NCBI RefSeq assembly: GCF_902713615.1
Contig: NC_052151.1
Span: 201,589,703-201,653,702 of the forward strand
Length of the DNA stretch: 64,000 bases
Direction of reading: 5' to 3'
DNA from: Scyliorhinus canicula
Lineage: Eukaryota
Each line of letters opens with the position of its first letter. Positions within the stretch are counted from its first letter, which is position 1. The notes beneath the pieces were generated by a model. That model was given only the letters and a program-made list of their open reading frames with translations, did not search any database and was not told where the DNA came from. Shown here in pieces: positions 7,628-64,000 of this stretch. The position numbers and the translations under genes were made by a program.

Positions 7628-8122
7628 GGTCACGCCAATAAATGGAAACTGCTGTCACTGTCCATCACTTGATGTAGAATTAAACAAGGAAACCTGAGTT
7701 TAACAAGTGTTGCTCTGCCCAGGAGATGGAATAGAATCTTTGTGCTGTGGGGATGGGGAGAGGGGGCCGGGGGGGGGGGGGGGGGGGGGGGGGGGGAACG
7801 GTTAACTCCCTTGGCAATTACTCACGTAGTTGTTGGGAATCGTGGGAGCCCGAGGCAGGCGCTGATCAAGCGGAGTCGAATCTGAAACGAGAGAGGTGGA
7901 GAGGTCAAGGGTTGGGATCCCGATGGGGCACAGCTTAATACCCAGCTCAGTGCGACAATTCCCATGTTCACAGCTTGACCATGATAATGACCAGCGATTT
8001 TGAGAGACAAGATGGCCGAATCTAACACACAAAATGGCCGACGGTGACAAGTCGGGTTTTGGTGTCCTGCGACCAATCCCCCTCTCCCTGGCGTACTACC
8101 CAAGATTAAAGTAAACTATTAC

Positions 8123-8248
8123 CTTCTATGTTTCCACGACCTGATTTCTGACATGTTTTCAAACGTAATGCGATGACGATGATGATAATGATGACGATGA
8201 CGGCAATGATGGGGACGATGATGGAGATGATGTTGAACCTAGCCTCTT
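8123..8248 (-). CDS. CD2/SLAM-family receptor copy A, transmembrane exon
   Basis: 126 nt, phase 1-1, tag acceptor and GTAATA donor. Encodes EEARFNIISIIVPIIAVIVIIIIIVIALRLKTCQKSGRGNIE. Homologous to 53390-53536 and lies in a duplicated block. Confidence 0.85.
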
Positions 8249-24502: not shown

Positions 24503-24715
24503 CTCTGCACCATTTAATTGTGAGATTCTGTGATCTCCTCACTGTTCGTCTTCCAATCTTGAAAAGCTGGACAAAATAACACCTTCAACATTAACCATTC
24601 CAGGGGTAACAGCCCGGTCTCTTGAAGCTGAACCCTTGGGTTCCCGCAGTTATCTCTCAGTCCACTCCATTCCCTACTCCAGCTTCCCCCTGTCAGATAC
24701 AAGGTTGACACTGAC

Positions 24716-25006
24716 CTTCCTGAGTGTGTTGACATGGTTTATCTTTACTGAACACTGTGCTCTCCTCACTGACAGGGTTCTGGGCTGTGCACAGGTAGTT
24801 GATGGAGTCGGAACTTCCCACCGACAATTCCAACTGCTCCATATTCCTGGAGACAGGCTGAATGGAATCATTCCTGTCAAAGTATCCAACTGGAGACCAG
24901 CTATAGAGGACACGATCTCCCCTCTCCACAGAGCAGCGCAGGGTCACCATACAGGGCTGACCAATGGTGGTGTTGACCAACTCCACTCGAGGCTTGGATA
25001 CAGGCT
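24716..25006 (-). CDS. CD2/SLAM-family receptor copy A, IgC2 exon
   Basis: Acceptor ctttgttcacacag, donor GTCAGT, 291 nt, phase 1-1. EPVSKP...CMVTLRC...YSW...YLCTAQNPVS...KPC has four Cys and the PVSKP and CxAxNPVS motifs of the SLAM C2 domain. Confidence 0.93.
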
Positions 25007-25064
25007 CTGTGTGAACAAAGAGAGGCTGTGAGTGAGTGTGGATCGGAAAAGCTCCTGGCCTGGA

Positions 25065-25228
25065 CTCTCCCCTCTGAGAGAGACGGGACCCTGAGACTCC
25101 TGTCTCCAGACCCTCCCCTCGGTGGGAGACGGGACGGAGAGACTCCTGTCCCCAGACTCTCCCCTCGGTGGGAGACGGGACGGAGAGACTCCTGTCCCCA
25201 GACTCTCCCCTCGGTGGGAGACAGGACC
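25065..25228. repeat. 46-bp VNTR in the IgV-IgC2 intron of copy A (about 3.5 units)
   Basis: Unit gagactcctgtccccagactctcccctcggtgggagacgggacgga. Confidence 0.9.
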
Positions 25229-25264
25229 GAGTAACTCTCTCAATTGAAACTGCAAAATACTCAC

Positions 25265-25594
25265 CATAAACCTGGAGAGAAAGTTGTTTTTTATGAACAC
25301 TTGATGCCACCACGGACACAGTGTAAATCCCTTCATCGATTCTTTCGAGTGCATTTATCTGAAGTGTAAAATTCACAAACATTTGGACTCTTCCTGCGAA
25401 TCTGCTTGGAAAGATCTTTGTTCTGTCAGTGCTGGTGTCATATCGGATGACAACGATTTCAGAGCTTCCTGTGAATCTCCAGATGATTTCTGCACCGTTT
25501 GGGATTGGGTCAATTTCCACAGGTAACCACACAGAATGTCCCAGGCTCCCATTCACTGGATAATCTGGAGTTATAACATTCACTTCACCAAGAC
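25265..25594 (-). CDS. CD2/SLAM-family receptor copy A, IgV exon
   Basis: Acceptor ttttccatttgaag, donor GTGAGT, 330 nt, phase 1-1. Encodes LGEVNVITPDY...IIWRF...FTLQINALERIDEGIYTVSV...LSLQVY: a V-set fold with the C-strand Trp and DxGxY motif but no Cys, typical of CD2/SLAM N-terminal domains. Confidence 0.92.
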
Positions 25595-25767
25595 CTTCAA
25601 ATGGAAAACATGAAACATACTTTTACTGTCAATCTCTCCCACACACACAAAATCATTTAGATTAGGTCTGTGTCTCTGTCATTGAAACTTGGGGAACATC
25701 ACAGATAACGGAGCAGTGATTGAAAAGGCAGCAATTGGAGACAATTCTCCAGAGATCAGCAGCTGAG

Positions 25768-28700: not shown

Positions 28701-31700
28701 GAGGGTCAGTACTGAGTGAGTGCTGCACTGTCAGAGGGTCAGTACTGAGTGAGTGCTGCACTGTCAGAGGGTCAGTACTGAGGGAGTGCTACACTGTCAG
28801 GGTCAGTACTGAGGGAGTGCTGCACTGTCAGAGGGTCGGTACTGAGGGAGTGCTGCACTGTCAGAGAGTCAGTACTGAGGGAGTGCTGCACTGTCAGAGG
28901 GTCAGTACTGAGCGAGTGCTGCACTCTCAGAGGGTCAGTACTGAGCGAGTCCTGCACAGTCAGAGGGTCAGTACTGAGGGAGCGCTGCACGGTCAGAGGG
29001 TCAGTACTGAGCGAGTGCTGCTCTGTCAGAGGGTCAGTACTGAGGGAGCTGCACTGTCAGAGGGTCAGTACTGAGGGAGGGCTGCACTGTCAGAGGGTCA
29101 GTACTGAGGGAGCGCTGCACTGTCAGAGGGTCAGTACTGAGGGAGTGCTGCACTGTCAAAGGGTCAGTACTGAGGGAGTGCTGCACTGTCAGAGGGTCAG
29201 TACTGAGGGAGTGCTGCACTGTCAGAGGGTCAGTGCTGAGGGAGTGCCATTCTGTCAGAGGGTCAGTACTGAGGGAGCGCTGCACTGTCAGAGGGTCAGT
29301 ACTGAGGGAGTGCTGTACTGTGAGAGGGTCAGTACTGAGGGACTGCTGCACTGTCAGAGGGTCAGTACTGAGGGAGTGCTGCACTGTCAGAGGGTCAGTA
29401 CTGAGGGAGTGCGGCACTGTCAGAGGGTCAGTACTGAGGGAGTGCTGCACTGTCAGAGGGTCAGTACTCACGGAGTGCTGCACTGTCAGAGGGTCAGTAC
29501 TGAGGGAGTGCTGCACTGTCAGAGGGTCAGTACTGAGGGAGTGCTGCACTGTCAGAGGGTCAGTACTGAGGGAGTGCTGCACTGTCAGGGAGTCAGTACT
29601 GAGGGAGTGCTGCACTGTCAGAGGGTCAGTACTGAGGGAGTGCTGCACTGTCAGAGGGTCAGTACTGAGGGAGTGCTGCACTGTCAGAGGGTCAGTACTG
29701 AGGGAGTGCTGCACTGTCAGAGGGTCAGTACTGAGGGAGCTGCACTGTCAGAGGGTCAGTACTGAGCGAGTGCTGCACTCTCAGAGGGTCAGTACTGAGC
29801 GAGTCCTGCACTGTCAGAGGGTCAGTACTGAGGGAGCGCTGCACTGTCAGAGGGTCAGTACTGAGGGAGCTGCACTGTCAGAGGGTCGGTACTGAGGGAG
29901 TGCTGCACTGTCAGAGGGTCAGTACTGAGGGAGAGCTGCACTGTCAGAGGGTCAGTACTGAGGGAGTGCTGCACTGTCAGAGGGTCAGTACTGAGGGAGT
30001 GCTGCACTGTCAGAGGGTCAGTACTGAGAGAGTGCTGCACTGTCAGAGGGTCAGTACTGAGCGAGTCCTGCACTGTCAGAGGGTCAGTACTGAGGGAGCG
30101 CTGCACGGTCAGAGGGTCAGTACTGAGCGAGTGCTGCTCTGTCAGAGGGTCAGTACTGAGGGAGTGCTACACTGTCAGGGTCAGTACTGAGGGAGTGCTG
30201 CACTGTCAGAGGGTCGGTACTGAGGGAGTGCTTCACTGTCAGAGGGTCAGTACTGAGGGAGTGCTGCACTGTCAGAGGGTCAGTACTGAGCGAGTGCTGC
30301 ACTCTCAGAGGGTCAGTACTGAACGAGTCCTGCACTGTCAGACGGTCAGTACTGAGGGAGCGCTGCACGGTCAGAGGGTCAGTACTGAGCGAGTGCTGCT
30401 CTGTCAGAGGGTCAGTACTGAGGGAGCGCTGCACGGTCAGAGGGTCAGTACTGAGGGAGTGCTGCACTGTCAGAGAGTCAGCACTGAGGGAGTGCTGCAC
30501 TGTCAGAGGGTTAGAAATGAGGGAGTGCTACACTGTCAGGGTCAGTACTGAGGGAGTGCTGCACTGTCAGAGGGTCAGTACTGAGGGAGCGCGGAACTGT
30601 CAGAGGGTCAGTACTGAGGGAGGGCTGCACTGACAGAGGGTCAGTACTGAGGGAGTGCTGCACTGTCAGAGGGTCAGTACTGAGGGAGTGCTGCACTGTC
30701 AAAGGGTCAGTACTGAGGGAGTGCTGCACTGTCAGAGGGTCAGTACTGAGGGAGTGCTGCACTGTCAGAGGGTCAGTGCTGAGGGAGTGCCACTCTGTTA
30801 GAGGGTCAGTACTGAGGGAGCGCTGCACTGTCAGATGGTCAGTACTGAGGGAGTGCTGTATTGTGAGAGGTTCAGTATTGAGGGAGTGCTGCACTGTCAG
30901 AGGGTCAGTACTGAGGGAGTGCGGCACTGTCAGAGGGTCAGTACTGAGGGAGTGCTGCACTGTCAGAGGGTCCGTACTGAGGGAGTGCCGCACTGTCAGA
31001 GGGTCAGTACTGAGGGAGTGCTGCACTTTCAGATGGTCAGTACTGAGGGAGTGCTGCACTGTCAGAGGGTCAGTACTGAGGGAGTGCTGCAATGTCAGAG
31101 GGTCAGTACTGAGGGAGCGCTGCACTGTCAGAGGGTCAGTACTGAGGGAGTGCTGCACTGTCAGAGGGTCAGTACTGAGGGAGCGCTGCACTGTCAGAGG
31201 GTCAGTACTGAGGGAGTGCCGCACTGTCAGAGGGTCAGTACTGAGGGAGTGCTGCACTGTCAGAGGGTCAGTACTGAGCGAGTGCTGCACTGTCAGAGGG
31301 TCAGTACTGAGGGAGTGCTGCACTGTCAGAGGGTCAGTACTGAGGGAGTGCTGCACTGTCAGAGGGTCAGTACTGAGCGAGTGCTGCACTCTCAGAGGGT
31401 CAGTACTGAGCGAGTCCTGCACTGTCAGAGGGTCAGTACTGAGGGAGCGCTGCTCTGTCAGAGGGTCAGTACTGAGGGAGCTGCACTGTCAGAGGGTCGG
31501 TACTGAGGGAGTGCTGCACTGTCAGAGGGTCAGTACTGAGGGAGTGCTGCACTCTCAGAGGGTCAGTACTGAGCGAGTCCTGCACTGTCAGAGGGTCAGT
31601 ACTGAGGGAGCGCTGCACGGTCAGAGGGTCAGTACTGAGCGAGTGCTGCTCTGTCAGAGGGTCAGTACTGAGGGAGTGCTACACTGTCAGGGTCAGTACT

Positions 31701-32668
31701 GAGGGAGTGCTGCACTGTCAGAGGGTCGGTACTGAGCGAGTGCTGCACTCTCAGAGGGTCAGTACTGAGCGAGTGCTGCTCTGTCAGAGGGTCAGTACTG
31801 AGGGAGCGCTGCACGGTCAGAGGGTCAGTACTGAGGGAGTGCTGCACTGTCAGAGAGTCAGCACTGAGGGAGTGCTGCACTGTAAGAGGGTTAGAAATAA
31901 GGGAGTGCTGCACTGTCAGAGGGTCAGTACTGAGTGAGTGCTGCACTGTCAGAGGGTTAGAACTGAGGGAGTGCTGCACTGTCAGAGGGTCAGTACTGAG
32001 TGAGTGCTGCACTGTCAGAGGGTCAGTACTGAGGGCGTGCTACACTGTCAGGGTCAGTACTGAGGGAGTGCTGCACTGTCAGAGGGTCGGTACTGAGGGA
32101 GTGCTGCACTGTCAGAGAGTCAGTACTGAGGGAGTGCTGCACTGTCAGAGGGTCAGTACTGAGCAAGTGCTGCACTCTCAGAGGGTCAGTACTGAGCGAG
32201 TCCTGCACTGTCAGAGGGTCAGTACTGAGGGAGCGCTGCACGGTCAGAGGGTCAGTACTGAGCGAGTGCTGCTCTGTCAGAGGGTCAGTACTGAGGGAGC
32301 GCTGCACGGTCAGAGGGTCAGTACTGAGGGAGTGCTGCACTGTCTGAGAGTCAGCACTGAGGGAGTGCTGCACTGTCAGAGGGTCAGTATTGAGGGAGTG
32401 CTGCACTGTCAGAGGGTCAGTACTGAGGGTGTGCTGCACTGTCAGAGGGTCAGTACTGAGGGAGTGCTGCACTGTCAGAGGGTCAGTACTGAGGGAGTGT
32501 GGCACTGTCAGAGGGTCAGTACTGAGGGAGTGCTGCACTGTCAGAGGGTCAGTGCTGAGGGAGTGCTGCACTGTCAGAGGGTCAGTGCTGAGGGAGTGCT
32601 GCACTGTCAGAGGGTCAGTACTGAGGGAGCGCTGCACTGTCAGAGGGTCAGTACTGAGTGAGTGCTGC
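25768..32668. repeat. 6.9-kb 33-bp satellite in intron 1 of copy A
   Basis: Unit actgagggagtgctgcactgtcagagggtcagt; contains higher-order duplications. Confidence 0.98.
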
Positions 32669-32862
32669 CCTGTCATTAGCAGTCTCCATGCTGCTAAGTG
32701 GATGTGGAACAATCCCTGGGACTGTTTGAAGGAAGTGCTCCGGATTCATCCCCAGCGAATACTCCATGAACGTCACTTACAATGACAGACTACTGGTTAG
32801 CACCTTAGTACATTGTGGGATCTTTTGTGTACAATGTTGCTGAGATTTCCAGAGCTACAGAG

Positions 32863-33266
32863 TGTCATAATAAACACACAAGTATATGATGGTGCAGAGA
32901 CACACACTGACTGACACAGTTCAAGACCAATCAACACACAGAACACAGCAGCCAATCACCAGACAGGACACGGCCACTATAAAGCCAGGGGGCACTAGCT
33001 TTCCCGCTCATTCGGGATGCAGCCTCTGAGACAGCCAGAGCCCGTGATCAGCAACACAAACATCCACCATGTGGTAGTAAGATAGTCTGGTCAGGTTAGC
33101 CTCAGGTCTCCAGTCAACATAGCATAGTGTCAACCCACAGGGCAAGTATGTTTAACAGCTCATCGTTAAATAAAATAGAGTTTTACTTCTCCAAGTGTTG
33201 GTAGCCTGTCTCTCTCACTGCTCTGGTAAACGCAGTCCTCGCAGACCCAGCTTACCCAACACATCA
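32863..33266 (+). mobile_element. Solo LTR with 5-bp TSD CAGAG
   Basis: TG...CA termini; CAGAG at 32858-32862 and 33267-33271; related to 3928-4311. Confidence 0.9.
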
Positions 33267-36611: not shown

Positions 36612-36669
36612 CGGCAGACAGAAGAGGAAGCAGGAGGAAAACCCGGGCTCTGAGACAACAAGCTGCCAT
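36612..36669 (-). CDS. CD2/SLAM-family receptor copy A, exon 1 (signal peptide)
   Basis: ATG at 36669 reads MAACCLRARVFLLLPLLSA-G then a GTAAGA donor (phase 1). It joins the IgV exon in frame to give ...LLSAGLGEVNVIT, a hydrophobic leader. The link spans an 11-kb intron and is inferred. Confidence 0.75.
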
Positions 36670-46735: not shown

Positions 46736-48274
46736 TATTAATAACAAGTTTGTTAATGTTTTATGTATTAATCTGGTGTCTGTAACTCATTGGAGCAGGC
46801 AAGGGTTAAATTTCTTTGGAGAATACAAATTATTGGTCAATTTGCTTATGTTTGGAGTCTGGGGTCTGTGGGACTGGCATTGACTGCGCACTCGCCCAGG
46901 GGGTGGTAACTCCGGGTCGAAGTGGGTCAGTAATTCATTCGATGAGAGATGCTGCTTCACCTCTTGAAATGCCTGTTGGTGCGGGGCGGCCCCAGTCCCA
47001 CTTCTGTCCCTTCTTCAGTAGTTGGTTGTGCGGAATGAGCCATCCTGGGTGTGAACTTCCCATAGTAGTTCACCAGGCCTAGGAGGGAACCATTTGATCA
47101 TGAGGGATGGGGCCCTGGTGAATCGCCCGCACCGTTTCTTCCACTGGATGGAGGCTCCTGCTGTCCACTCGGCAGCCGAGATATGTTGACCTGCGGTGGG
47201 TGACCCCTGACTGAGAAAACCGGTCAAAGACCTCGGTTTGATTCTCCACGTGTTCCTGATACGAGGTCCCTGTGATGATAACATCGTCCAGTGAGACGGC
47301 CACCCTTGGCAGCTCTTTAAAGATATTCTCCATAACCCTCTGGAATATTGCACAATCTGAAGAGACTCCGAACGGCAACTGCGCTTACTCGTATAGTCCA
47401 GTTGGGTATTGATCATTACGTATTTCCGGGAACTTGGCATGAGCACCAGATACAAGTCAGCATGGCTCATGTCCAGCTTCGTGAAAGTTTTTCCTCCACT
47501 GAGCCAGGGGAGAGACCATCAGTCTGAGACACTGGGTATTGGTCAAAGCGGGATTCCCAGTTTACGGTCATTTCACAGAGCCACACCCACCCTTCTGGCT
47601 TCAACACGGGGACTACAGGTGTAGCCCAATCAGCATAGTGGATGGGGGGGGGGGGATAAGAGCCAGCTGCTCTACCTTGACGCAAAGTGTATACGGCACA
47701 GGGCGGGCACGGAAATATCAGGGGTGGGCATTCTCTTCCACATTTATCGTGGCCATTGATCCTTTAATGGTCCCATGGCCTTTGGCAAAAACCGATGGGG
47801 ACCTGGACAGCACTCCATCTTGTCCAATGGGGTACATCTGGCACATTCATTGCCAATCCAAACATTATTGTCGCAGCCAATCATACCCCAATAGGCTGGG
47901 CCCGATGCCACGGACGATCACGCGGATTGGTCTCCGTATTCCATGGGCACGTGTACGGTGCCCTCGATTTATAATAATCATCTTTTTATTGTCACAAATA
48001 GGCTTCCATTAACACTGCAACAAAGTTACTGTGAAAAGCCCCTAGTCGCCACATTCCGGCACCTGTTCGGGTACACAGAGGGAGAATTCAGAATTCTCAG
48101 CTGGTACGGGAATTGAACCCACGCTGCTGGCCTTGTTCAGCATGACAAGCCAGCTGTCTAGCCCACTGAGCTAATCCAGCCCCCGGTGTACGCGGCCAGT
48201 TGGGCGAAGCTCCAGCGGCTGAAGACCTGTCGGGATCGCTGAAAGTCTGCAAACACTGACGCCAGAAACTGCCA

Positions 48275-48845
48275 TAAGACCATAAGACATAGGAGTGGAA
48301 GTAAGGCCATTCGGCCCATCGAGTCCACTCCGCCATTCAATCATGGCTGATGGGCATTTCAACTCCACCTCCCAGCATTCTCCCCATAGCCCTTAATTCC
48401 TCGCGACATCAAGAATTTATCTATCTCTGCCTTGAAGCCATTTAGCGTCCCGGCCTCCACTGCACTCTGCGGCAATGAATTCCACAGGCCCACCACTCTC
48501 TGGCTGAAGAAATGTCTCCGCATTTCTGTTTTGAATTTACCCCCTCTAATTCTAAGGCTGTGCCCACGGGTCCTCGACTCCTCGCCTAACGGAAACAGTT
48601 TCTTTGCGTCCATCCTTTCTAAGCCATGTATTATCTTGTAAGTTTCTATTAGATCTCCCCTTAACCTTCTGAACTCCAATGAATACAATCCCAGGAACGC
48701 CAGCCGTTCCTCATATGCTAGACCCGCCATTCCAGGGATCATCCGTGTGAATCTCCGCTGGACACGCTCCAGTGCCAGTATGTCCTTCCTGAGATGTGGG
48801 GCCCAAAACTGGACACAGTACTCCAAATGGGGCCTAACCCGTGTC
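48275..48845 (-). mobile_element. CR1 3' fragment
   Basis: VRPHLEYCVQFWAPHLRKD through AGRWS with an intact frame, plus tail. Confidence 0.92.
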
Positions 48846-51407
48846 CAGTTCGATCTGGGTGGGGGGGTCGCGTTTAGCAGCAGCATCACCCGGATAGGTG
48901 CCATTCTGGGGCCAGTCACACAGAGCAGCAGCAGGGTCAGCTCCTCAGACTCCAGGTCTTCCAGGGAATGCCTGCTGCTCCTTCGGGGAAAATGGCGACT
49001 GGTCCGTTGTTGGGAAACGGCACCCTCACGTGATCGCCCGGAGCCTCGTTCCTGGCCTTGCTTTCCCGCTTGATGCTGGTGCCTGCCGTCCGGAAACACT
49101 GAGTCGGGGGAAGCTCCACGGTCCGGGATGAGTCACGGCGGAAGTAGTGGGACTTGCGGTGACTTCCACCCTGGGATGGTCCCGGCACCTCGATTCTGGT
49201 GGTCGCCAGCCGGCGGTGTTGATGGCCCCCAATGTTCAGGACCGTTCGGAGTTCTTGGAGCCTGCGGACGGCGCTTTCTTGGGTGAGCGACAGCCCTGGC
49301 CAGGGTCCGGGGAGTCTCCCAGTCCCGAAGTCCGCAAACAAAGCGGTCCCTCAGTGATTCAGTAAGGGCAGTTCCGAACTCGCAGGGGGCAGCGAGTCCC
49401 CGTACGCAGGCCAAGTGTTCCCAGGTGGACTCTGGGAAGAGCTATGGAAAGGGTACCGCCAGACTAATGGGGAGGCTGTTCATTTAGCTGACGGCCCACT
49501 CAGTCAATCAGCCTGACGAACGGCAATCATCCCGTCCTGTCTGGGTAAGTCACGTTCCTGATTAGTGCATAGGTCGGTCCTCCAACGGCGGTCACTAAGG
49601 TGACGGTCTGTCGCTCGTCAGTGCTGATGACGTTTATGTGAAAAAAAATGTTTTGATGTGCTGGGCCCAATCGTCCGAGTTGGCATCAAAAGGCTCGGCA
49701 TTTCCTATGTGTGCCATACCTGCCAGCTGGAGAATGGCCTCCTGAGGAAGCGGAAAAACGATTCAGGTAGCACTTTATCCTCGTCGCCAGTGCTGTAGAC
49801 GGAGGCAATGACTCCACAATGGGCCGGGCTGATAGGATACAACACTCTTTATTCCACACTGCTCAATCAATCCTCAACACTGACTCCTCTCCACTCCCCA
49901 CAGCGTCTCCTTCCCCCAACTGCTTCCGGGTCGGGGTTTGTTTCCTATGGAGAGCTCCACCAATTGGGAGGAAGCTTCCCCCCCCCCCCCAGTCACCTGG
50001 GTAGCTCATACTCTGAGGCACATGCAGGTTGTGTTTCTCTGAGCTCCCGCTGCTTCTGGCTGTCACCCTGCTCCCGGACCTGGTGTGTTATTCTGTATAT
50101 TGGCTGACTTTCCTGGACTTTGAACCCTGGACTAAGGCAAGGGGGAACGGTGCTATGAACGGCTGGATAGAGGGGAAGAGGATCCTGTTGCTTCTGCCAG
50201 TTGCTTGCAGGGGAGCGAGAGAGGAGAGAGCTTACCTGCCTGCAGTTGTTACGCCTGGGACTCGTACTTGTCACTGGCTGCCTTTCTGCTTATCGGCTGG
50301 GAGTGGCGCATGGCGGGGGTGTGGGGGGTTGGGGTTAGGTTGGCCTCCTCCTGGGCTGAAGGTGGAGGAGAACAGACTGGTTTTTGCAGCTTTGGACTGG
50401 ATGGTGTCTGGATGCTGGAACTGTGAGAGCTGCTTGTGCAAATGTTGGTTTGGTTTGACTGTTGGGGGGGATTGTGTAGTTATTATTGTATTTATGTTGT
50501 GTTTTGTTTATTTTTGTATCTAGCGTCTGGGTGCTCGCCAGTTGGGGCCCCCCCTGTTTCAGTGCACTGGAAGGTGAGGGGTCTTCCCGGTTCTAGTGAA
50601 GGGGAGGGATGTTCTCTCTCACTCTCCTCCACCCCTCGCTGCCTGTCCTTTTCCAGTGGACTGAGCTGCTTGTGGGCGCCTCTTCTCTGACGTGAGGCTG
50701 TCGCTGGAGCCGGAGGAGGGTGGGGGAGGGGAGCATGTGCTGGCTCGAGTGCTGGCGGCTTTACCGTGTATTTAATTGTTTGTTGGATTTCTTGCTGTTG
50801 CTCTGTATTTTGTTTTGTTTTTTGTAAAAGGATCTCTGTGTCTTCGTAATAACAGAAATTCAAGATTGGCTTCTTGGATTGAAAGCAATTTGCAACTTTT
50901 ATTTTGTCACCTAGTAGTGTCAACTGGTAAGCTTTAATTTTCACACGAGTACTGAATTTAGGAAGGCCCAACCAGCCCTGCAGTAAGCTAGTCAGATGTA
51001 TCGATTGTTTGTCCTCAGCAAATACAGCTAAGTTGAATTGAATTTAAAATGCTATTATAGTTCGTGGTAATTTTGTCAACTCAAGATTCACAGTACAAAA
51101 TGACTGCGCAGTTTAAAATAGAATAAAATAGCCATTTTGCAAAGCAAGCAGATAGAATACGTTTCAGAGGATAGGTTGCATTGATTCTGGAGTGGCCTTC
51201 CCATCCCAATGCCTGAACTTTTAAGAAGATTACTATCCTAAACGTTTCGTCCTCTTTACAGCTATGATTGGTTTTAAATAATTTATAATTCATTCAATTC
51301 GAGCAAATGTCTGTCTGTTCAAATTTAAGAGATAACGGTGGCTGTATTTTTCCATAGCACCAGGAGTGGGGTGACTGGTCGTCACCATCAAAACAAAACT
51401 AGGATTT

Positions 51408-51580
51408 CAGCACAGGGCTAAATCGCTGGCTTTGAAAGCAGACCAAGTCAGGCCAGCAGCACGGTTCGATTCCCGTAACAGCCTCCCCGAACAGGCGCCG
51501 GAATGTGGCGACTAGGGGCTTTTCACAGTAACTTCATTGAAGCCTACTCGTGACAATAAGTGATTTTCATTTCATTTCAT
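51408..51580 (+). mobile_element. Short tRNA-derived SINE
   Basis: ggttcgattccc B-box-like motif and the tail shared with the 14860-type SINEs, ending (ttcat)n. Confidence 0.75.
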
Positions 51581-53389
51581 AGTTCTTTACGAGACAGAGG
51601 GTCTTTTCGCAGCATGACTGAGCGCAGACTCTGACGGTCTGCGAAAATGTGCTTATCAGATCAATTCACAAGCACTCCGCTTTTCTTACTGTCACGGTTA
51701 ATATATGACTTTAAATTTTATTTGACATGATTTCTCTCAATAATTTCTTCATTTAAACCTTTTTCTCTCTTTTCCGCCTTGCGGGGTGGGGGTGGGGGGG
51801 GGGATGGGGATGGGGGGTGGTGCCATTGACTTCATCCAGTTGCCTTCTCTCATTCCCTGTGTCAAGGTCCAGCATGGAGCGGGGAGATTCCATTGGGAGT
51901 CTATTTCGGAATACTGTCCAGCTGAGGTCAAGGCCTGGGAGCAATAGTGGGAGGAGGTAGGGGGAGGGGGGGAGGAAGAGACAGGAATCTTGCTGTGCCT
52001 GCGAGGATCAGCACCACACCAGGATAACTTGGTACAGACCCTGGGAGGGGGTAAGAGGGGTGTAAACCAGGCTCCTCTGTCAGTAATGGTGGGGGTGGAG
52101 GGGTGGGTTTATGAGAGTTAATTAGGAGGTTTGAGGGCAGTGAGAGATGCAGATGTTGGGTGTGGGATTGGAACAGGGAGTGACGAAGGGAGATGACATG
52201 AGAAGGGGCCACCAGCGGCTAACAGGAAATCTTCACTGGCAGATTGGTCAGACTGGGAGTCCCACCGCGTAGACCCGTCTCTGAACGTCTTGGTCCCAGG
52301 GCTGCCGAGGAGGGCCCTCTTTTCCTTCCACTTTTCGGAAGATGACCTTTGATCTTGGCAGCGAACGAGGCTGGAATGGGATCAACCTGCAAATGAAAGA
52401 TGGAGGTGTCGGTATATCAGCAACAAATGACATTTCCTGGAAGCACGTCAACAGTGACAGAGACAACAACATTTAAACACACTGCTGGCAATCAGGTCAA
52501 TATCAGATACGGACATTACAGTGGGAGGGAGCGGAGTGGTTCAGCAATATCGCTCCAGCATTGCAAAGGAACCTCCCACCTGTTCACATTACCATGCTCA
52601 GTGGGGTCTGGAACTAACAACTCCACCTGTCTTCCTCAAACATCCACTCCCTCCACCACCAACGCAGAGCCGTCACCAAAGACATCTCTGTGCAGCCGTG
52701 TGTACCACCCACAGGTCAAGGCTCCTTCGGCAGCACCTTCCCAACTCACGACTTCTACCATCCAGAAGGACAAGAGCAGCGATCCCTTCCAGTCAGGAAC
52801 ACTTCAGCAGTCCAGGCCGTTCCGCCTCCCATCTTTGGGTAAACATTCTCCAAGGCGCCCTTTGCGTCAACGCAGAATCTCCGAGCAGAAACCCGTAGCC
52901 AAGTTCCACACGCGTGAGGGCGGCCTCAACCGAGATCTCGGGGTCGCGTCACATTACATGTAACCCCCACCATACTACCCGGGTTGGAAGAATCCTACTA
53001 AGTGTCCTGGCTTGAGACAATTCACAGCTTGATTCCCTGCGATTATCCCTCACCCCACTCACACTATTCCTATAAAGATTTGCTCTTCACATTCCAATCT
53101 GTCATTATTTTGCAATTGTGTCTCTCCTGTATATTGCTGCGATTGTGAACCTGTCTCCACTTCGCCTGATGGAGGGGCGGCGCTCTGAAAGCTACTGATT
53201 TCAAATCAACCTGTTGGACTTTAACCGGGTGTGAGACTTCTTACCCAGCAAGGAAAAGCTGAGTTCAATGAGCGTGGCTCCGCCCACGAGCTGAATATAA
53301 TGCAAGATGGCCAAAGGTGACAGGTCGGATTATTACGTCCTGCGACCAATCCCCTCCACGTATTGCCTGAGATTAAGATGAACCATTAC

Positions 53390-53536
53390 CTTCTATGTTT
53401 CCATGACCAGATTTCTGACGTGACTTATGATATAAAACGATGATAATAATGATCATGATGGAGAAGATAATGATGATGCTGATTTTGACAATGATGGGGA
53501 TAATGTTGATCCTGGTCTTGAATAAATTATTTGAAT
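53390..53536 (-). CDS. CD2/SLAM-family receptor copy B, transmembrane exon
   Basis: Acceptor tttcctgtcttgcag, donor GTAATG, 147 nt, phase 1-1. Encodes DSNNLFKTRINIIPIIVKISIIIIFSIMIIIIIVLYHKSRQKSGHGNIE. Confidence 0.87.
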
Positions 53537-53591
53537 CTGCAAGACAGGAAACAAATAGACAAACGTGAGATCTATGGGCAATAAGTGGGGT

Positions 53592-53955
53592 AGAATCAAA
53601 AGAGTCATAGGATTTGCAGTGCTGAAGGAGGCCATTTGGCCCATCGAGTCTGCACCGGCCCTTGGAAAGAGCACCCCACCCAAGCCCACACCTCCATCCC
53701 ATCCCCACACCTACACCCTATCCCCGTAACCCCAACAAATCTTTTTTGGACACCAAGGGCAATTTATCATGGCCAATCCATCTAATCTGCACAGTTTTGG
53801 ACTGTGGAGGGGAAAGCGGAGCACCCGGAGGAAACCCACGCAGACACGGGGAGAACGTGCAGACTCCGCACAGACAGTGACCCAAGCCAGGAATCGAACC
53901 TGGGACCCTGGAGCTGTGAAGAAACTGTGCTAACCACTGTGCTACCGTGCTGCTG
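53592..53955 (-). mobile_element. V-SINE/HE1-like SINE
   Basis: Full head, V-domain and tail. Confidence 0.88.
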
Positions 53956-54869: not shown

Positions 54870-55352
54870 ATGAGACATAGCTGCAGAATTAGGCCTCTCG
54901 GCCCATCGAGTCTGCTCCGCTATTCAATCATGGCTGATATTTTTCTCATCCCCATTCTCCTGCCTTCTCCCCATAACCCCTGATCCCCTTATTGATCAAG
55001 AACCTATCTATCTCTGTCTAAAAGACACTCAGTGATTTGGCCTCCACAGCCTTCTGCGGCAAAGAGTTCCACTGATTCATCAACATCTGGCTGAAGAAAT
55101 TCCTCCTCATCTCTGTTTTAAAGGATCGTCCCTTTACTCTTAGATTCTGTCCTCTGGTTCTAGTTTCTCCAACAAGTGGAAACATCCTCTCCACGTCCAC
55201 TCTATCCAGGCCTCGCAGTACCCTGTAAGTTTCAATAATATCCCCCCTCATCCTTCTGAACTCCGAGAACAGACCCAGAGCCCTCAACCATTCCTCAGAC
55301 GACAAGCTCTTCATTCCAGGGATCTTTCTTGCGAACCTCCTCTGGACCCTTT
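54870..55352 (-). mobile_element. CR1 3' fragment
   Basis: LERVQRRFARKIPGMK...WNSLPQKAVEA. Confidence 0.9.
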
Positions 55353-55506
55353 CCAAGGGCAGCACGGTAGCATTGTGGATAGCACAATCGCTTCACAGCT
55401 CCAGGGTCCCAGGTTCGATTCCGGCTTGGGTCACTGTCTGTGCGGAGTCTGCACATCCTCCCCGTGTGTGCGTGGGTTTCCTCCGGGTGCTCCAGTTTCC
55501 TCCCAC

Positions 55507-56432
55507 TATGCACAGTTCTGGTCTCCATATCCCTCGGTTAGACCACACTGGGAGCACTGTGCACAGTTCTGGTCTCCATATCCCTCGGTTAGACCACACT
55601 TGGAGCACTGTGCACAGTTCTGGTCTCCATAATCCCTCAGTTAGACCACACTGGGAGCACTGTGCACATTTCTGGTCTCCATATCCCTCGGTTAGACCAC
55701 ACTTGGAGCACTGTGCACAGTTCTGGTCTCCATATCCCTCGGTTAGACCACATTTGGAGCACTGTGCACAATTCTGGTCTCCATATCCCTCGGTTAGACC
55801 ACACTTGGAGCACTGTGCACAGTTCTGGTCTCCATATCCCTCGGTTAGACCACATTGGGAGCACTGTGCACAGTTCTGGTCTCCATATCCCTCGGTTAGA
55901 CCACACTGGGAGCACTGTGCACAATTCTGGTCTCCATATCCCTCGGTTAGACCACACTTGGAGCACTGTGCACAGTTCTGGTCTCCATATCCCTCGGTTA
56001 GACCACATTTGGAGCACTGTGCACAATTCTGGTCTCCATATCCTCGGCTAGACCACATTTGGAGCACTGTGCACAATTCTGGTCTCCATATCCCTCGGTT
56101 AGACCATACTGGGAGCACTGTGCACAATTCTGGTCTCCATATCCCTCGGTCAGACCACACTGGGAGCACTGTGCACAGTTCTGGTCTCCATATCCCTCGG
56201 TTAGACCACACTGGGAGCACTGTGCACAGTTCTGGTCTCCATATCCCTCGGTTAGACCACGCTTGGAGCACTGTGCACAGTTCTGGTCTCCATATCCCTC
56301 GGTTAGACCACACTGGGAGCACTGTGCACAGTTCTGGTCTCCATATCCCTCGGTTAGACCACGCTTGGAGCACTGTGCACAGTTCTGGTCTCCATATCCC
56401 TCGGTTAGACCACGCTTGGAGCACTGTGCACA
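55507..56432 (+). repeat. 51-bp CR1-derived minisatellite (copy B), preceded by a SINE head at 55357-55506
   Basis: Same unit as 9950-11370. Confidence 0.95.
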
Positions 56433-56534
56433 GACTCAATCATGGAGCTTTTAAAAAAAAAATTCTTTAAAGGCACCAGTGAATGAGGAGAATAGATTTA
56501 CACAGAACAAATAGCCATGATCCTTTCTTCAGAA

Positions 56535-58690: not shown

Positions 58691-58981
58691 CTTTCTGTGT
58701 ATGTTGACATGGTTTATCTTTACTGAACACTGTGCTCTCCTCGCTGACAGGGTTCTGGGCTGTGCACAGGTAGTTGATGGAGTTGGACATTCCCACCGAC
58801 ACTTCCAACTGCTCCATATTCCTGGAGACAGGCTGAATGGAATCATCCCAGTCAAAGTATCCAACTGGAGACCAGCTATAGAGGACACGATCTCCCCTCT
58901 CCACAGAGCAGCGCAGGGTCACCATACAGGGCTGACCAATGGTGGTGTTGACCAACTCCACTCGAGGCTTGGATATAGGCT
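58691..58981 (-). CDS. CD2/SLAM-family receptor copy B, IgC2 exon
   Basis: 291 nt, same splice sites, four Cys retained. 7 amino-acid differences over 97 positions versus copy A. Confidence 0.93.
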
Positions 58982-59029: not shown

Positions 59030-59568
59030 CTGGCCTGGACTCTCCCCTCGGTGGGAGACGGGACCCTGAGACTCCTGTCCCCAGACTCTCCCCTCGGTGG
59101 GAGACGGGACGGAGAGACTCCTGTCCCCAGACTCTCCCCTCGGTGGGAGACGGGACGGAGAGGCTCCTGTCCCCAGACTCTCCCCTCGGTGGGAGACGGG
59201 ACGGAGAGGCTCCTGTCCCCAGACTCTCCCCTCGGTGGGAGACGGGACGGAGAGGCTCCTGTCCCCAGACTCTCCCCTCGGTTGGAGACGGGACGGAGAG
59301 ACTCCTGTCCCCAGACTCTCCCCTCGGTGGGAGACGGGACGGAGAGGCTCCTGTCCCCAGACTCTCCCCTCGGTGGGAGACGGGACGGAGAGGCTCCTGT
59401 CCCCAGACTCTCCCCTCGGTGGGAGACGGGACGGAGAGACTCCTGTCCCCAGACTCTCCCCTCGGTGGGAGACGGGACGGAGAGGCTCCTGTCCCCAGAC
59501 TCTCCCCTCGGTGGGAGACGGGACGGAGAGGCTCCTGTCCCCAGACTCTCCCCTCGGTGGGAGACGGG
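59030..59568. repeat. 46-bp VNTR in the IgV-IgC2 intron of copy B (about 12 units)
   Basis: Same unit as 25065-25228. Confidence 0.95.
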
Positions 59569-59610
59569 AAATAGTTACCCTTCTCTCAATTGAAACTGCA
59601 AAATACTCAC

Positions 59611-59940
59611 CATAAACCTGGAGAGAAAGGTGTTTTTTATCATCTCTTGATGTCACCACGGACACAGTGTAAATCCCTTCATCGATTCTTTCGAGTGCGT
59701 TTATCTGAAGCGTAAAATTCACAAACATTTGAACTCTTCCTGCGAATCTGCTTCGAAAGATCTTTGTTGTGTTAGTGCCGGTGTCATATCGGGCGATGCT
59801 GGTTTCAGGGCTTCCTGTGAATTTCCAGATGATTTCTGCATCGTTTGGGATTGGGTCAATTTCCACAGGTAACCACACAGAATGTCCCAGGCTCCCATTC
59901 ACTGGATAATCTGGAGTTATAACATTCACATCACCAAGAC
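59611..59940 (-). CDS. CD2/SLAM-family receptor copy B, IgV exon
   Basis: Same splice sites and 330-nt length as copy A. 17 amino-acid differences over 109 codons; frame open. Confidence 0.92.
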
Positions 59941-60112: not shown

Positions 60113-63100
60113 ACAGAGGGTCAGTAATGAGGGGGTGCTGCACTGTCAGAGGGTCAGTACTGAGGGAGCGCGGCACTGTCAGAGGGTCAGTACTGAGGGA
60201 GTGCTGCACTGTCAGAGGATCAGTACTGAGGGAGTGCTGCACTGTCAGAGGGTCAGTACTGAGGGAGCGCCGCACTGTCAGAGGGTCAGCACTGAGGGAG
60301 TGCTGCACTGTCAGAGGGTCAGTACTGAGGGAGTGCCGCACTGTCAGAGGATCAGTACTGAGGGAGTGCTGCACTGTCAGAGGGTCAGTACTGAGGGAGT
60401 GCTGCACTGTCAGAGGGTCAGTACTGAGGGAGTGCTGCACTGTCAGAGGGTCAGTACTGAGGCAGTGCTGCACTGTCAGAGGGTCAGTACTGAGGGAGCG
60501 CTGCACTGTCAGAGGATCAGTACTCAGGGAGTGCTGCACTGTCAGAGGGTCAGTACTGAAGGAGTGCTGCACTGTCAGAGGGTCAGTACTGAGGGAGGGC
60601 TGCACTGTCAGAGAGTCAGAACTGAGGGAATGCCGCACTGTCAGAGGGTCAGTACTGAGTGAGTGCTGCACTGTCAGAGGGTCAGTACTGAGGGAGTGCT
60701 GCACTGTCAGAGGGTCAGTACTGAGGGAGTGCTGTACTGTCAGAGGGTCAGTACTGAGGGAGTGCAGCACTGTGAGAGAGTCAGTACTGATGAGTGCTGT
60801 ACGGTCAGAGGGTCAGTTCTGAGGGAGCGCTGTACTGTCAGAGGGTCAGTACTGAGGGAGTGCTGCACTGTCAGAGGTTCAGTACTGAGGGAGTGCTGCA
60901 CTGTCAGAGGGTCAGTACTGAGGGAGTGCTGCACTGTCAGAGGGTCAGTACTGAGGAAGTGCTGCACTGTCAGAGGGTCAGTACTGAGGGAGTGCTGCAC
61001 TGTCAGAGGGTCAGTACTGAGGGAGTGCTGCACTGTCAGAGGGTCAGTATTAAGGGAGCACTGCACTGTCAGAGGGTCAGTACTGAGGGAGTGCTATACT
61101 GTCGGAGAGTCAGTACTGAGGGAGTGCTGCACTGTCTGAGGGTCAGTACTGAGGGAGAGCTGCACTGTCTCATGGTCAGTACTGAGGGAGTGCTGCACTG
61201 TCAGAGGGTCAGTACTGAGGGAGTGCTGCACTGTCAGAGGGTCAGTACTGAGGGAGTGCTGCACTGTCACAGTGTCAGTTCTGAGGGAGTGCTGCACTGT
61301 CAGAGGGTCAGTACTGAGGGAGTGCTGTACTGTCAGAGGGTCAGTACTGAGGGAGCGCTGCACTGTCACAGGATCAGTACTGAGGGAGTGCTGCACTGTC
61401 AGAGGGTCAGTACTGAGGGAGTGCTGCAGTGTCAGAGGGTCAGTACTGAGGGAGAGCCGCACTGTCAGAGGGTCAGTACTGAGGGAGTGCTGCACTGTCA
61501 GAGGGTCAGTACTGAGGGAGTACTGCACTGTCAGAGGGTCAGTACTGAGGGACTGCCGCACTGTCAGAGGGTCAGTACAGAGGGAGTGCTGCACTGTCAG
61601 AGAGTTAGTACTGAGGGAGTGCTGCACTGTCAGAGGGTCAGTACTGAGGAAGCACTGCACGGTGAGAGAGTCAGTACTGATGAGTGCTGTACGGTCAGAG
61701 GGTCAGTTCTGAGGGAGCGCTGTACTGTCAGAGGGACAGTACTGAGGGAGCGCTGCACTGTCAGAGGGTCAGTACTGAGGGAGTGCTGCACTGTCAGAGG
61801 GTCAGTACTGAGGGAGTGCTGCACTGTCAGAGGTTCAGTACTGAGCGAGTGCTGCACTGTCAGAGGTTCAGTACTGAGCGAGTGCTGCACTGTCAGAGGG
61901 TCAGTACTGAGGGAGTGCTGCACTGTCAGAGGGTCAATACTGAGGGAGCTCTGCACTGTCAGAGGGTCAGTACTGAGGGAGTGCTGCACTGTCAGAGGGT
62001 CAGTACTGAGGGAGTGCTGCACTGTCAGAGGGTCAGTACTGAGAGGATGCTGCACTGTCAGAGAGTCAGTACTGAGGGAGTGCTGCACCATCAGAGGGTC
62101 AGTACTGAGGGAGTGCTGCACTGTCAGAAGGTCAGTATTAAGGGAGCACTGCACTGTCAGAGGGTCAGTACTGAGGGAGTGCTGCACTGTCAGAGGGTCA
62201 GTACTGAGGGAGTGCTGCACTGTCAGAGGGCCAGTACTGAGGGAGCGCTGCACTGTCGGACGGTCAGTACTGAGGAAGCGCTGCACTGTCAGAGGGTCAG
62301 TACTGAGGGAGTGCTGCATTGTCAGAGGGTCAGTACTGAGGGAGTGCTGCACTGTCAGAGCGTCAGTGCTGAGGGAGAGCTGCACTTTCAGAGGGTCAGT
62401 ACTGAGGGAGTGCCTCACTGTCAGAGGGCCAGTACTGAGGGAGTGCTATACTGTCAGAGAGTCAGTACTGAGGGAGTGCTGCACTGTCTGAGGGTCAGTA
62501 CTGAGGGAGAGCTGCACTGTCTCAGGGTCAGTACTGAGGGAGTGGTGCACTGTCACAGGGCCAGTACTGAGGGAGTGCTGTACTGTCAGAGGGTCAGTAC
62601 TGAGGGAGTGCTGTACTGTCAGAGGGTCAGTACTGAGGGAGCGCTGCACTGTCACAGGATCAGTACTGAGGGAGTGCTGCACTGTCAGAGGGTCAGTACT
62701 GAGGGAGTGCTGCACTGTCAGAGGGTCATAGAACATAGAACAGTACAGCACAGAACAGGCCCTTCAGCCCTCGATGTTTTGCCGAGCAATGATCACCCTA
62801 CTCAAACCCATGTATCCACCCTATACCCGTAACCCAACAAACCCCCCCCCCCAACCTTACTTTTTAGGACACTATGGGCAATTTAGCATGTCCAATCCAC
62901 CTAACCCGCAGATCTTTGGACTGTGGGAGGTAACCGGAGCACCCGGAGGAAACCCACGCACACACGGGGAGGACATGCAGACTCCGCACAGACAGTCACC
63001 CAGCCGAGAACCGAACCTGGGACCCTGGAGCTGTGAAGCATTTATGCTAACCACCATGCTACCGTGCTGCCCCTGAGCAGTACTCCCTCAGTACTGAGGG

Positions 63101-63655
63101 AGTGCTGCACTATCAGAGGGTCAGTACTGAGGGAGTGCTGCACTGTTAGAGGGTCAGTACTGAGGGAGTGCGGCACTGTTAGAGAGTCAGTACTGAGGGA
63201 GTGCTGCACTGCCAGAGGGTCAGTACTGAGGGAGTGCTGCACTGTCAGAGGGTCAGTACTGAAAGAGTGCTGCACTGTCAGAGGGTCAGTACTGAGGGAG
63301 TGCTGCACTGTCAGGGACAGTACTGAGGGAGTGCTGCACTGTCAGAGGGTCAGTACTGAGGGAGTGCTGCACTGTTAGTGGGTCAGTACTGAGAGAGTGC
63401 TGCACTGTCAGAGGGTCAGTACTGAGGGAGTGCTGCACTGTCAGAGGGTCAGTACTGAGGGAGTGCTGCACTGTTAGGGGGTCAGTACTGAGGGAGTGCT
63501 GCACTGTTAGGGGGTCAGTACTGAGAGAGTGCTGCACTGTTAGGGGGTCAGTACTGAGAGAGTGCTGCATTGTCAGAGGGTCAGTACTGAGGGAGTGCTG
63601 CACTGTTAGTGGGTCAGTACTGAGAGAGTGCTGCACTATCAGAGGGTCAGTGCTC
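60113..63655. repeat. 33-bp satellite in intron 1 of copy B
   Basis: Same unit and same start position relative to the IgV exon as in copy A. Confidence 0.97.
62727..63072 (-). mobile_element. V-SINE inserted into the 33-bp satellite
   Basis: Full-length SINE between satellite units. Confidence 0.92.
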
Positions 63656-64000
63656 GGGTTGCGCTGACACTAATAAAACTTATTATTATTATTCAAAGCT
63701 GAAGATAGGGGGAAATGTTTAAGGGGAGGGGGCGGGGAGGGAAATAGTAGGTCCGTGATAGGTTGGAGCTGGGAGGGATTGCCCTATGATGTCATGGGGA
63801 CAAGACAGGGAAGTGTTAACGACAGTGTTACAGACTGGAGAAGGTGGCAATAGTGGCAGAAAGGCAAGATGGCAGAAACGGAGGGGACGGGGTGGTGGGG
63901 TGGGGGGGGCGGGGGGTGGGGTGGGGGGGGTGGGGTGGGGGGGATTATATTTATATAAGACTGTATTTCGGGCAGTGAAGGAATCAGGGAATGTGGGACA

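What the first reader, a model, noticed from the sequence alone, without database searches (positions are those of the whole stretch)
53390..53536. Copy B has a lysine in its TM segment, copy A has none: possible paired activating/inhibitory receptors
Seen: B reads NIIPIIVKISIIIIFSIMIIIIIVLY; A reads NIISIIVPIIAVIVIIIIIVIAL; the ectodomains are nearly identical. Known: a basic TM residue in Ig-family NK/myeloid receptors recruits FcR-gamma or DAP12, whereas classical SLAMs signal through cytoplasmic ITSMs. Inference: a paired-receptor design within a SLAM-like family would be unusual. Caveat: 18 uncharged residues follow the Lys, so it may lie just outside the membrane.
Basis: partly seen in the sequence, partly recalled or inferred. 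Interest (0 to 1): 0.7.

Follow-up and report, generated by a model that had tools for sequence, protein, structure and literature searches.

The report
Catshark SLAM receptor pair, lysine anchor
Two neighbouring catshark immune-receptor genes of the SLAM family share almost the same outer part. One has a tyrosine-motif signalling tail, while the other has a conserved lysine in its membrane anchor and almost no tail, which is the build of paired receptors already reported in frog SLAM genes.

Summary
Window 53390-53536 (minus strand) is a 147-nt phase 1-1 exon of Scyliorhinus canicula 'SLAM family member 5-like' (XP_038656738.1, copy B). It encodes the stalk, the membrane anchor and the juxtamembrane segment, with Lys244 (codon 53484-53486).

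- **Short tail.** RNA-derived contigs from three studies splice this exon to a terminal exon at 52386 that adds Gly and then TGA. B therefore has a 14-residue tail without any tyrosine motif.
- **Partner gene.** Copy A (XP_038656733.1) has no charge in its anchor. Its tail carries YEN and the ITSM TIYAVV.
- **Conservation.** The Lys, the exon length and the stop are conserved in the S. torazame orthologue. The Lys is also kept in a second S. canicula allele that differs at four neighbouring residues.
- **Concerted evolution.** Ectodomains group by species (AU test rejects orthology, p = 9e-8). Anchor exons group by type.
- **Position of the Lys.** It lies inside the predicted helix, 8 uncharged residues in and 18 from the cytoplasmic boundary.

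This fits an adaptor-coupled partner of an ITSM receptor, but the coupling was not tested. It is not unprecedented. Xenopus CD2/SLAM genes use NxxR anchors, and other shark and ray SLAM-like proteins carry an Arg at the aligned position. This scan also noted a similar SLAM pair 184 kb away (s1-286317).

The parts
59611..59940 (-). Copy B IgV exon (330 nt, phase 1-1). The V-set domain has no cysteine, as in the CD2/SLAM family.
   Evidence: Splice motifs and translation. 100% match to P0002 residues 20-129.
58691..58981 (-). Copy B IgC2 exon (291 nt, phase 1-1) with four cysteines.
53390..53536 (-). Copy B exon for the stalk, membrane anchor and juxtamembrane segment. This is the finding itself.
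   Evidence: RNA contigs X2, X3 and X4 cover it, with flanking letters that lie elsewhere (table 8).
53484..53486 (-). Codon AAA for Lys244 of copy B.
   Evidence: Frame counted from the exon start. No variant at these bases in four runs (table 3).
52387..53389 (-). Last intron of copy B (1003 nt, GT..AG on the minus strand).
   Evidence: Joint 52384/52386 to 53388/53390, 'CT..AC (cut +2)', in contigs of X1, X3 and X4 (table 5).
52041..52386 (-). Terminal exon of copy B. It starts GT then TGA (stop at 52382-52384), so the protein ends ...GNIEG. The rest is 3' UTR. AATAAA lies further on, at 51717-51722.
   Evidence: (X3 record 23 spans 52041-52384 plus the anchor exon). Agrees with the 276-aa NCBI product.
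36612..36669 (-). Copy A exon 1 (ATG at 36669, signal peptide).
   Evidence: tblastn of P0001 residues 1-20 at 100%. Donor gtaaga.
25265..25594 (-). Copy A IgV exon.
24716..25006 (-). Copy A IgC2 exon.
8123..8248 (-). Copy A membrane-anchor exon (126 nt, no charged residue in the hydrophobic stretch). It is skipped in isoform X2.
   Evidence: Present in P0219 (isoform X1, 309 aa) and absent from P0001 (isoform X2).
7825..7881 (-). Copy A first cytoplasmic exon (DSTPLDQRLPRAPTIPNNY). The last exon, with ITSM TIYAVV, lies outside the window.

Best explanation
Copies A and B are a tandem pair of CD2/SLAM-family receptor genes of the small-spotted catshark, built like a paired receptor. A is the ITSM type, with an uncharged anchor and a 41-residue tail carrying YEN and TIYAVV. 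B is the short-tailed type. Its anchor exon is homologous to A's but has a Lys in the outer third of the helix. A different terminal exon stops translation one codon after the anchor exon. I infer that B arose from an A-like gene by changes within the anchor exon plus loss of the cytoplasmic exons, the route proposed for activating KIRs. I also infer that the Lys lets B assemble with an ITAM subunit that has an Asp in its own anchor (FcR gamma, CD3 zeta or DAP12 type), so that the same ligand gives an ITSM signal through A and an ITAM signal through B. Gene conversion keeps the two ectodomains alike. Shown here: gene structures, splicing, the short tail, conservation of the Lys, and concerted evolution. 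Inferred: the origin of B, adaptor binding and the signalling outcome.
For: - **Gene models and splicing.**
- **Tail.** 14 residues without a tyrosine motif. No relic of A's cytoplasmic exons was found between B and A.
- **Homology limit.** A/B homology ends about 120 bp 3' of the anchor exon.
- **Conservation.** The S. torazame orthologue P0004 has the same length (276 aa), the same Lys and the same stop position. The anchor-exon peptide is 73% identical and gapless between canB and torB, against 49% between canB and canA.
- **Second allele.** In run X3 four residues near the Lys differ (I>F, S>F, M>I, V>A). All four equal the torazame state, and the Lys is unchanged (table 3).
- **Position in the helix.** The best 19-25-residue hydrophobic windows all include the Lys. 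The AlphaFold2 helix spans 238-269, with mean pLDDT 85 for residues 241-250.
- **Ectodomain tree.** (canA,canB) has support 97/96 and (torA,torB) 100/99. The AU test rejects canB+torB at p = 9.3e-8.
- **Relatives.** Arg sits at the aligned anchor position in other shark and ray SLAM-like proteins, three of which (P0099, P0128, P0191) have tails of 4-19 residues; P0111, P0164 and P0216 have 42-55 residues without an ITSM.
- **Published rule and precedent.** Basic residues in ligand-binding chains pair with acidic residues in signalling subunits, and Xenopus CD2/SLAM genes use NxxR anchors (PMC4536121, PMC6557307).
Against: - No adaptor association, surface-expression or signalling data exist.
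- The Lys is near the outer end of the helix. The 18 residues after it could almost span the hydrocarbon core, so it could snorkel and have no role.
- Mammalian SLAMF8 and SLAMF9 have short tails and, as far as I recall, are not known to use such adaptors.
- The B type was found only in two species of one genus. The nearest other shark retrieved (Mustelus) gave only the A type, although absence was not shown.
- The anchor is Ile-rich and repeat-like, and evolves fast.
- The clade for the AU test was named after the identity values had been seen.
Confidence: 0.6

Rival explanations
1. B is a non-signalling short-tailed SLAM form: a decoy, a ligand, or a cis-regulator of A, comparable to CD48 or SLAMF8/9. 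Its Lys sits at the membrane interface and merely snorkels, and no adaptor is involved.
For: Eighteen uncharged residues follow the Lys. Short-tailed or lipid-anchored members without ITSM exist in the mammalian family (own knowledge). B's ectodomain is kept like A's, which a competitor for the same ligand would also need.
Against: The Lys is invariant across two species and two alleles while its neighbours change. Eight uncharged residues precede it inside one predicted helix. A basic residue recurs at the aligned position in other cartilaginous-fish SLAM-like proteins that lack an ITSM, some of them with short tails.
Confidence: 0.3
2. B is a decaying duplicate of A that lost its 3' end in a rearrangement. 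It looks intact only because gene conversion from A keeps repairing the ectodomain exons.
For: A/B homology stops about 120 bp 3' of the anchor exon. Exon dS is about 0.05, lower than the intron divergence.
Against: The truncated form, with the same length, Lys and stop, is kept in S. torazame. It is correctly spliced in RNA contigs of three studies. The anchor exon is open in both alleles.
Confidence: 0.07

Closest known systems
Xenopus CD2/SLAM-family receptors with NxxR membrane anchors (Guselnikov et al. 2011, as cited in PMC4536121 and PMC6557307)
   Same: A CD2/SLAM-type ectodomain is combined with a basic residue in the anchor. These occur within an expanded family that also has ITSM members.
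   Different: The frog genes use the conserved NxxR (Arg) anchor type shared with LRC and FCRL receptors. Copy B has a Lys with the nearest Asn at -7. Its anchor exon is a diverged copy of the partner's own anchor exon.
Activating versus inhibitory KIRs (KIR2DS/KIR2DL)
   Same: There is a Lys in an anchor that otherwise resembles the tyrosine-motif partner's anchor, a truncated tail, near-identical ectodomains, close linkage and sequence exchange between partners (PMC6557307 for the KIR anchor statement).
   Different: The Ig family and chromosome region differ. The KIR Lys is more central and pairs with DAP12. The partner here has an ITSM plus YxN, not ITIMs.
Mammalian SLAMF6 (NTB-A), CD48 and CD2
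   Same: These are among the best solved-structure matches to the V+C2 ectodomain: 2if7 E = 1.7e-8 over residues 31-222, then CD48 and CD2, interleaved with CD276 and CEACAM1 chains. The V domain lacks the disulfide. Copy A has an ITSM.
   Different: To my knowledge no mammalian SLAM member combines a basic anchor residue with a tail of about 14 residues.
Other cartilaginous-fish SLAM-like proteins with Arg in the anchor (P0099 S. torazame, P0128 Mustelus asterias, P0111, P0164 and P0191 Mobula, P0216 Hemitrygon)
   Same: A basic residue at the aligned anchor position, 18-21 uncharged residues before the cytoplasmic boundary, and no ITSM.
   Different: They are only 27-31% identical to B. They carry Arg in an I-R context, and some have tails of 42-55 residues.

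Membership tests
CD2/SLAM family of Ig receptors | N-terminal V-set domain without the canonical disulfide, followed by a C2-set domain with conserved cysteines | tested here: met
   B's V exon encodes no Cys and its C2 exon encodes four. Pfam V-set, Ig_3 and ig are precomputed for P0002. The AlphaFold2 model shows two beta domains.
CD2/SLAM family of Ig receptors | Closest sequence relatives are SLAM, CD48 and CD2 proteins | tested here: met
   PDB search: SLAMF6 over both domains, then CD48 and CD2. CD276 and CEACAM1 score similarly on parts. Database relatives are named SLAM, CD48 or Ly-9-like.
CD2/SLAM family of Ig receptors | ITSM (TxYxxV/I) in the cytoplasmic tail (classical SLAM members only) | tested here: not met
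   Copy A has TIYAVV. Copy B's tail is HKSRQKSGHGNIEG, without a tyrosine motif. This excludes B only from the classical ITSM subset, not from the family.
Paired activating/inhibitory-type receptors | Linked genes with highly similar ectodomains kept alike within a species | tested here: met
   Tandem genes on the same strand. B's terminal exon lies about 15 kb from A's ATG. Identity is 88%. The tree groups by species, and the AU test rejects orthologous grouping at p = 9.3e-8.
Paired activating/inhibitory-type receptors | One partner has a tyrosine-motif tail; the other has a short tail and a basic residue in the anchor | tested here: met
Paired activating/inhibitory-type receptors | The short-tailed partner associates with an ITAM or YxxM signalling subunit through the charged residue | not testable with these tools
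An unchecked scan note (s1-243490) places an expressed FcR gamma gene 559 kb before the window.
NxxR-type FcR gamma-associating anchors | Asn three residues before an Arg in the anchor, with acidic residue(s) at the C-terminal end | tested here: not met
   B reads N-I-I-P-I-I-V-K, so the Asn is at -7 and the basic residue is Lys. The helix ends in YHKSR.

The most novel reading that the evidence does not exclude
At the base of jawed vertebrates, SLAM-family genes already worked as ITSM/adaptor-coupled pairs, made KIR-style by a charge change in the anchor plus tail loss. The adaptor would be the FcR gamma chain encoded on the same chromosome. In that case the FCER1G-SLAM linkage seen at human 1q23 would be the remnant of an ancient receptor-adaptor unit that mammals later lost on the SLAM side.
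Probability: 0.2. Interest if true: 0.65.

Novelty: new member of a known kind. Interest (0 to 1): 0.5.

Why it matters
Mammalian SLAM receptors are taught as self-contained ITSM receptors. A conserved, expressed, lysine-anchored and nearly tailless partner in sharks adds to the frog NxxR forms. Together they suggest that adaptor-coupled SLAM receptors are old and widespread outside mammals. The pair also offers a simple test system: one ectodomain on two signalling modules, useful for asking how early vertebrate lymphocytes balanced signals. I found no paper on cartilaginous-fish SLAM genes in the held library.

Tried and rejected
- **Ig motif scan.** A scan for the classical G-x-Y-x-C Ig motif found no Ig exon, because the CD2/SLAM V domain lacks the cysteine. 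The exons were located through a scan note and the self-comparison.
- **ITSM scan downstream of B and A.** It gave only chance hits. A's last exon is outside the window.
- **Database search with B's anchor region alone.** It returned only B itself.
- **Neighbouring DNA from other assemblies.** Attempts for the NCBI assemblies of S. canicula and Mustelus asterias returned no DNA. One isoform was not on record. A B-type gene in Mustelus could therefore be neither found nor excluded.
- **Literature searches.** Searches for shark SLAM genes and for shark DAP12/FcR gamma found nothing relevant. Guselnikov 2011 is not held, so it is cited only through two papers that summarise it.
- **Read-through ending.** Reading through the donor would give ...NIEGNGSS*. 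I rejected this as the main product because the contigs show the spliced form and the NCBI product ends at G276.

Full report
**What the window is.** The repeats and the database matches identify the small-spotted catshark, Scyliorhinus canicula. Two NCBI products match the window exon by exon at 100%. They are XP_038656733.1/XP_038656734.1 ('signaling lymphocytic activation molecule-like', copy A) and XP_038656738.1 ('SLAM family member 5-like', copy B). Both genes lie on the minus strand.

- Copy A: exon 1 at 36612-36669, IgV 25265-25594, IgC2 24716-25006, anchor exon 8123-8248, first cytoplasmic exon 7825-7881. The last exon lies outside the window.
- Copy B: IgV 59611-59940, IgC2 58691-58981, anchor exon 53390-53536.
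- B's signal exon lies beyond the window end. The gene range on record is 13.8 kb.

**The observation.** The finding's coordinates are exactly one exon. It is bounded by ...cttgcag| and |gtaatg, is 147 nt long, and is phase 1 at both ends. It encodes a short stalk and a 27-residue uncharged stretch interrupted only by Lys244 (AAA, 53484-53486). The segment YHKSRQKSGHGNIE follows. The strings quoted for A and B are correct. Copy A has Pro where B has Lys in the simplest alignment. The ectodomains are 88% identical: IgV 93/110 and IgC2 90/97.

**The tail of B.** Contigs of four public runs were laid on 47650-53649. In X1, X3 and X4, which come from three studies, a contig joins 53390 to 52386. 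This removes 1003 nt with GT..AG on the minus strand. X3 record 23 and X4 record 31 also carry about 27 letters upstream of the anchor exon that do not lie in the laid stretch, as expected if they come from the IgC2 exon. The terminal exon starts GT TGA. The phase-1 G of the anchor exon therefore becomes Gly276, followed by a stop at 52382-52384. This matches the 276-residue NCBI product exactly. An AATAAA lies 664 nt into this exon. B's cytoplasmic part after Tyr262 is thus 14 residues long and has no tyrosine motif. No relic of A's cytoplasmic exons was found between B and A. A/B homology stops about 120 bp 3' of the anchor exon. Copy A isoform X1 (P0219, 309 aa) continues with a tail that ends in ...IPNNYENG...TIYAVV..., that is, a YxN site and one ITSM.

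**Is the Lys in the membrane?**

- An AlphaFold2 model built on ten relatives gives one helix from 238 to 269. Mean pLDDT is 85 for residues 241-250 and 91 for 251-260.
- Eight uncharged residues precede the Lys and 18 follow it, up to Y262-H263-K264.
- The Lys is therefore in the outer third of the anchor, not outside it.
- From my own knowledge, this depth is close to that of the Arg in NxxR receptors and of the Asp in FcR gamma and CD3 zeta. That is a recollection, not a test.

**Conservation.**

- S. torazame has the same pair. P0003 is the A type with TIYAVV. P0004 is the B type: 276 aa, the same Lys and the same end.
- The B anchor-exon peptides of the two species align without gaps at 73% identity. 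B against A within either species gives 49%.
- Run X3 carries a second S. canicula allele of the exon, with four differences, all non-synonymous (I>F, S>F, M>I, V>A). All four equal the torazame residue, and the Lys codon is untouched (table 3).

**Concerted evolution.** A maximum-likelihood tree of the mature ectodomains joins canA with canB (support 97/96) and torA with torB (100/99). Forcing canB with torB costs 94.9 log-likelihood units (AU p = 9.3e-8). Forcing canA with torA gives p = 3e-4. I named these clades after seeing the identity table, which weakens the formal p-value but not the pattern. At the DNA level, A and B are 93.0% identical in IgV and 96.2% in IgC2. Flanking introns are 85-92% identical. 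The anchor exon is about 81% identical over the aligned part, with 28 nt unaligned. The B type therefore predates the split of the two species, and the ectodomain exons have been homogenised since. This is the usual signature of paired receptors.

**Family context.** The best solved-structure matches include SLAMF6 over both domains, CD48 and CD2. CD276 and CEACAM1 score similarly on parts. A full HMMER search gave 936 relatives at E <= 0.001. A profile search returned 81 proteins, most of them annotated shark and ray proteins. In a simple anchor scan, several of these have an Arg at the position that aligns with Lys244, 18-21 uncharged residues before the cytoplasmic boundary, and lack an ITSM:

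- P0099 (S. torazame, tail 8 residues)
- P0128 (Mustelus asterias, tail 4)
- P0191 (Mobula hypostoma, tail 19)
- P0111, P0164 and P0216 (Mobula and Hemitrygon, tails 42-55)

**What is known.** All ITAM subunits carry an acidic residue in the anchor that pairs with a basic residue of the ligand-binding chain (PMC4536121). NxxR anchors, which promote association with FcR gamma, are used by Xenopus FCRL and CD2/SLAM receptors (PMC4536121 and PMC6557307, both citing Guselnikov 2011, which I could not read). Activating KIRs have a Lys in an anchor that is otherwise like the inhibitory partner's, which suggests descent from the inhibitory form (PMC6557307). Copy B fits the KIR route rather than the NxxR route. 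Its anchor exon is a diverged copy of A's, sharing the N-I-I-x-I-I-V start and the QKSGxGNIE end. It has no NxxR motif.

**Verdict.** The structure is solid. B is an expressed, conserved SLAM-family gene with a lysine in the anchor and a 14-residue tail, next to an ITSM partner with a homogenised ectodomain. The function is inferred. I put about 0.6 on an adaptor-coupled partner, 0.3 on a non-signalling short-tailed form, and little on decay. The design is a new member of a known kind, not a new principle. This scan noted a similar SLAM pair 184 kb beyond the window (s1-286317) and an FcR gamma gene 559 kb before it (s1-243490). I did not check either note.

Noticed in passing
window 8123-8248 (copy A anchor exon): NCBI isoform X2 of copy A (P0001, 267 aa) skips the in-frame 126-nt anchor exon. 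This joins the ectodomain directly to the cytoplasmic exons and may give a secreted form. Its abundance is unknown.
   Followed up: partly
window 53437, 53454, 53461, 53474: A second S. canicula allele of B's anchor exon (run X3) has four differences, all non-synonymous and all equal to the S. torazame residue. The reference allele therefore looks derived, and the anchor evolves fast around a fixed Lys.
   Followed up: partly
window 25769-33000 and 60114-63671: A very large 33-bp satellite fills intron 1 of both genes and is 90-95% alike between them.
   Followed up: no
window 25040-25231 and 59084-59569: A 46-bp tandem repeat in the IgV-IgC2 intron is expanded in B. In copy A the whole intron is open in the exon frame, giving a stop-free 309-codon stretch at 24696-25622. 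This looks accidental.
   Followed up: no
window 9955-11369 and 55352-56433: A 51-bp tandem repeat lies in the IgC2-anchor intron of both copies. The intron is 16.5 kb in A and 5.2 kb in B.
   Followed up: no
window 25265-25594 versus 59611-59940: Between A and B the IgV exon has 19 non-synonymous and 4 synonymous differences (dN/dS 1.43). IgC2 has 8 and 3 (0.74). The counts are too small for a test, but they agree with the separate note on V-domain differences (s1-253721).
   Followed up: partly
copy A tail (exon 7825-7881 and the exon beyond the window): The YxN site (PNNYEN; NDYEN in the skate), upstream of the ITSM, is kept in the ITSM-bearing A-type relatives of the alignment, from catshark to skate, which suggests a conserved second docking site.
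   Followed up: no
P0099, P0128, P0111, P0164, P0191, P0216 (other species): A set of shark and ray SLAM-like proteins has an I-R motif in the anchor and no ITSM. I found no paper describing them.
   Followed up: partly
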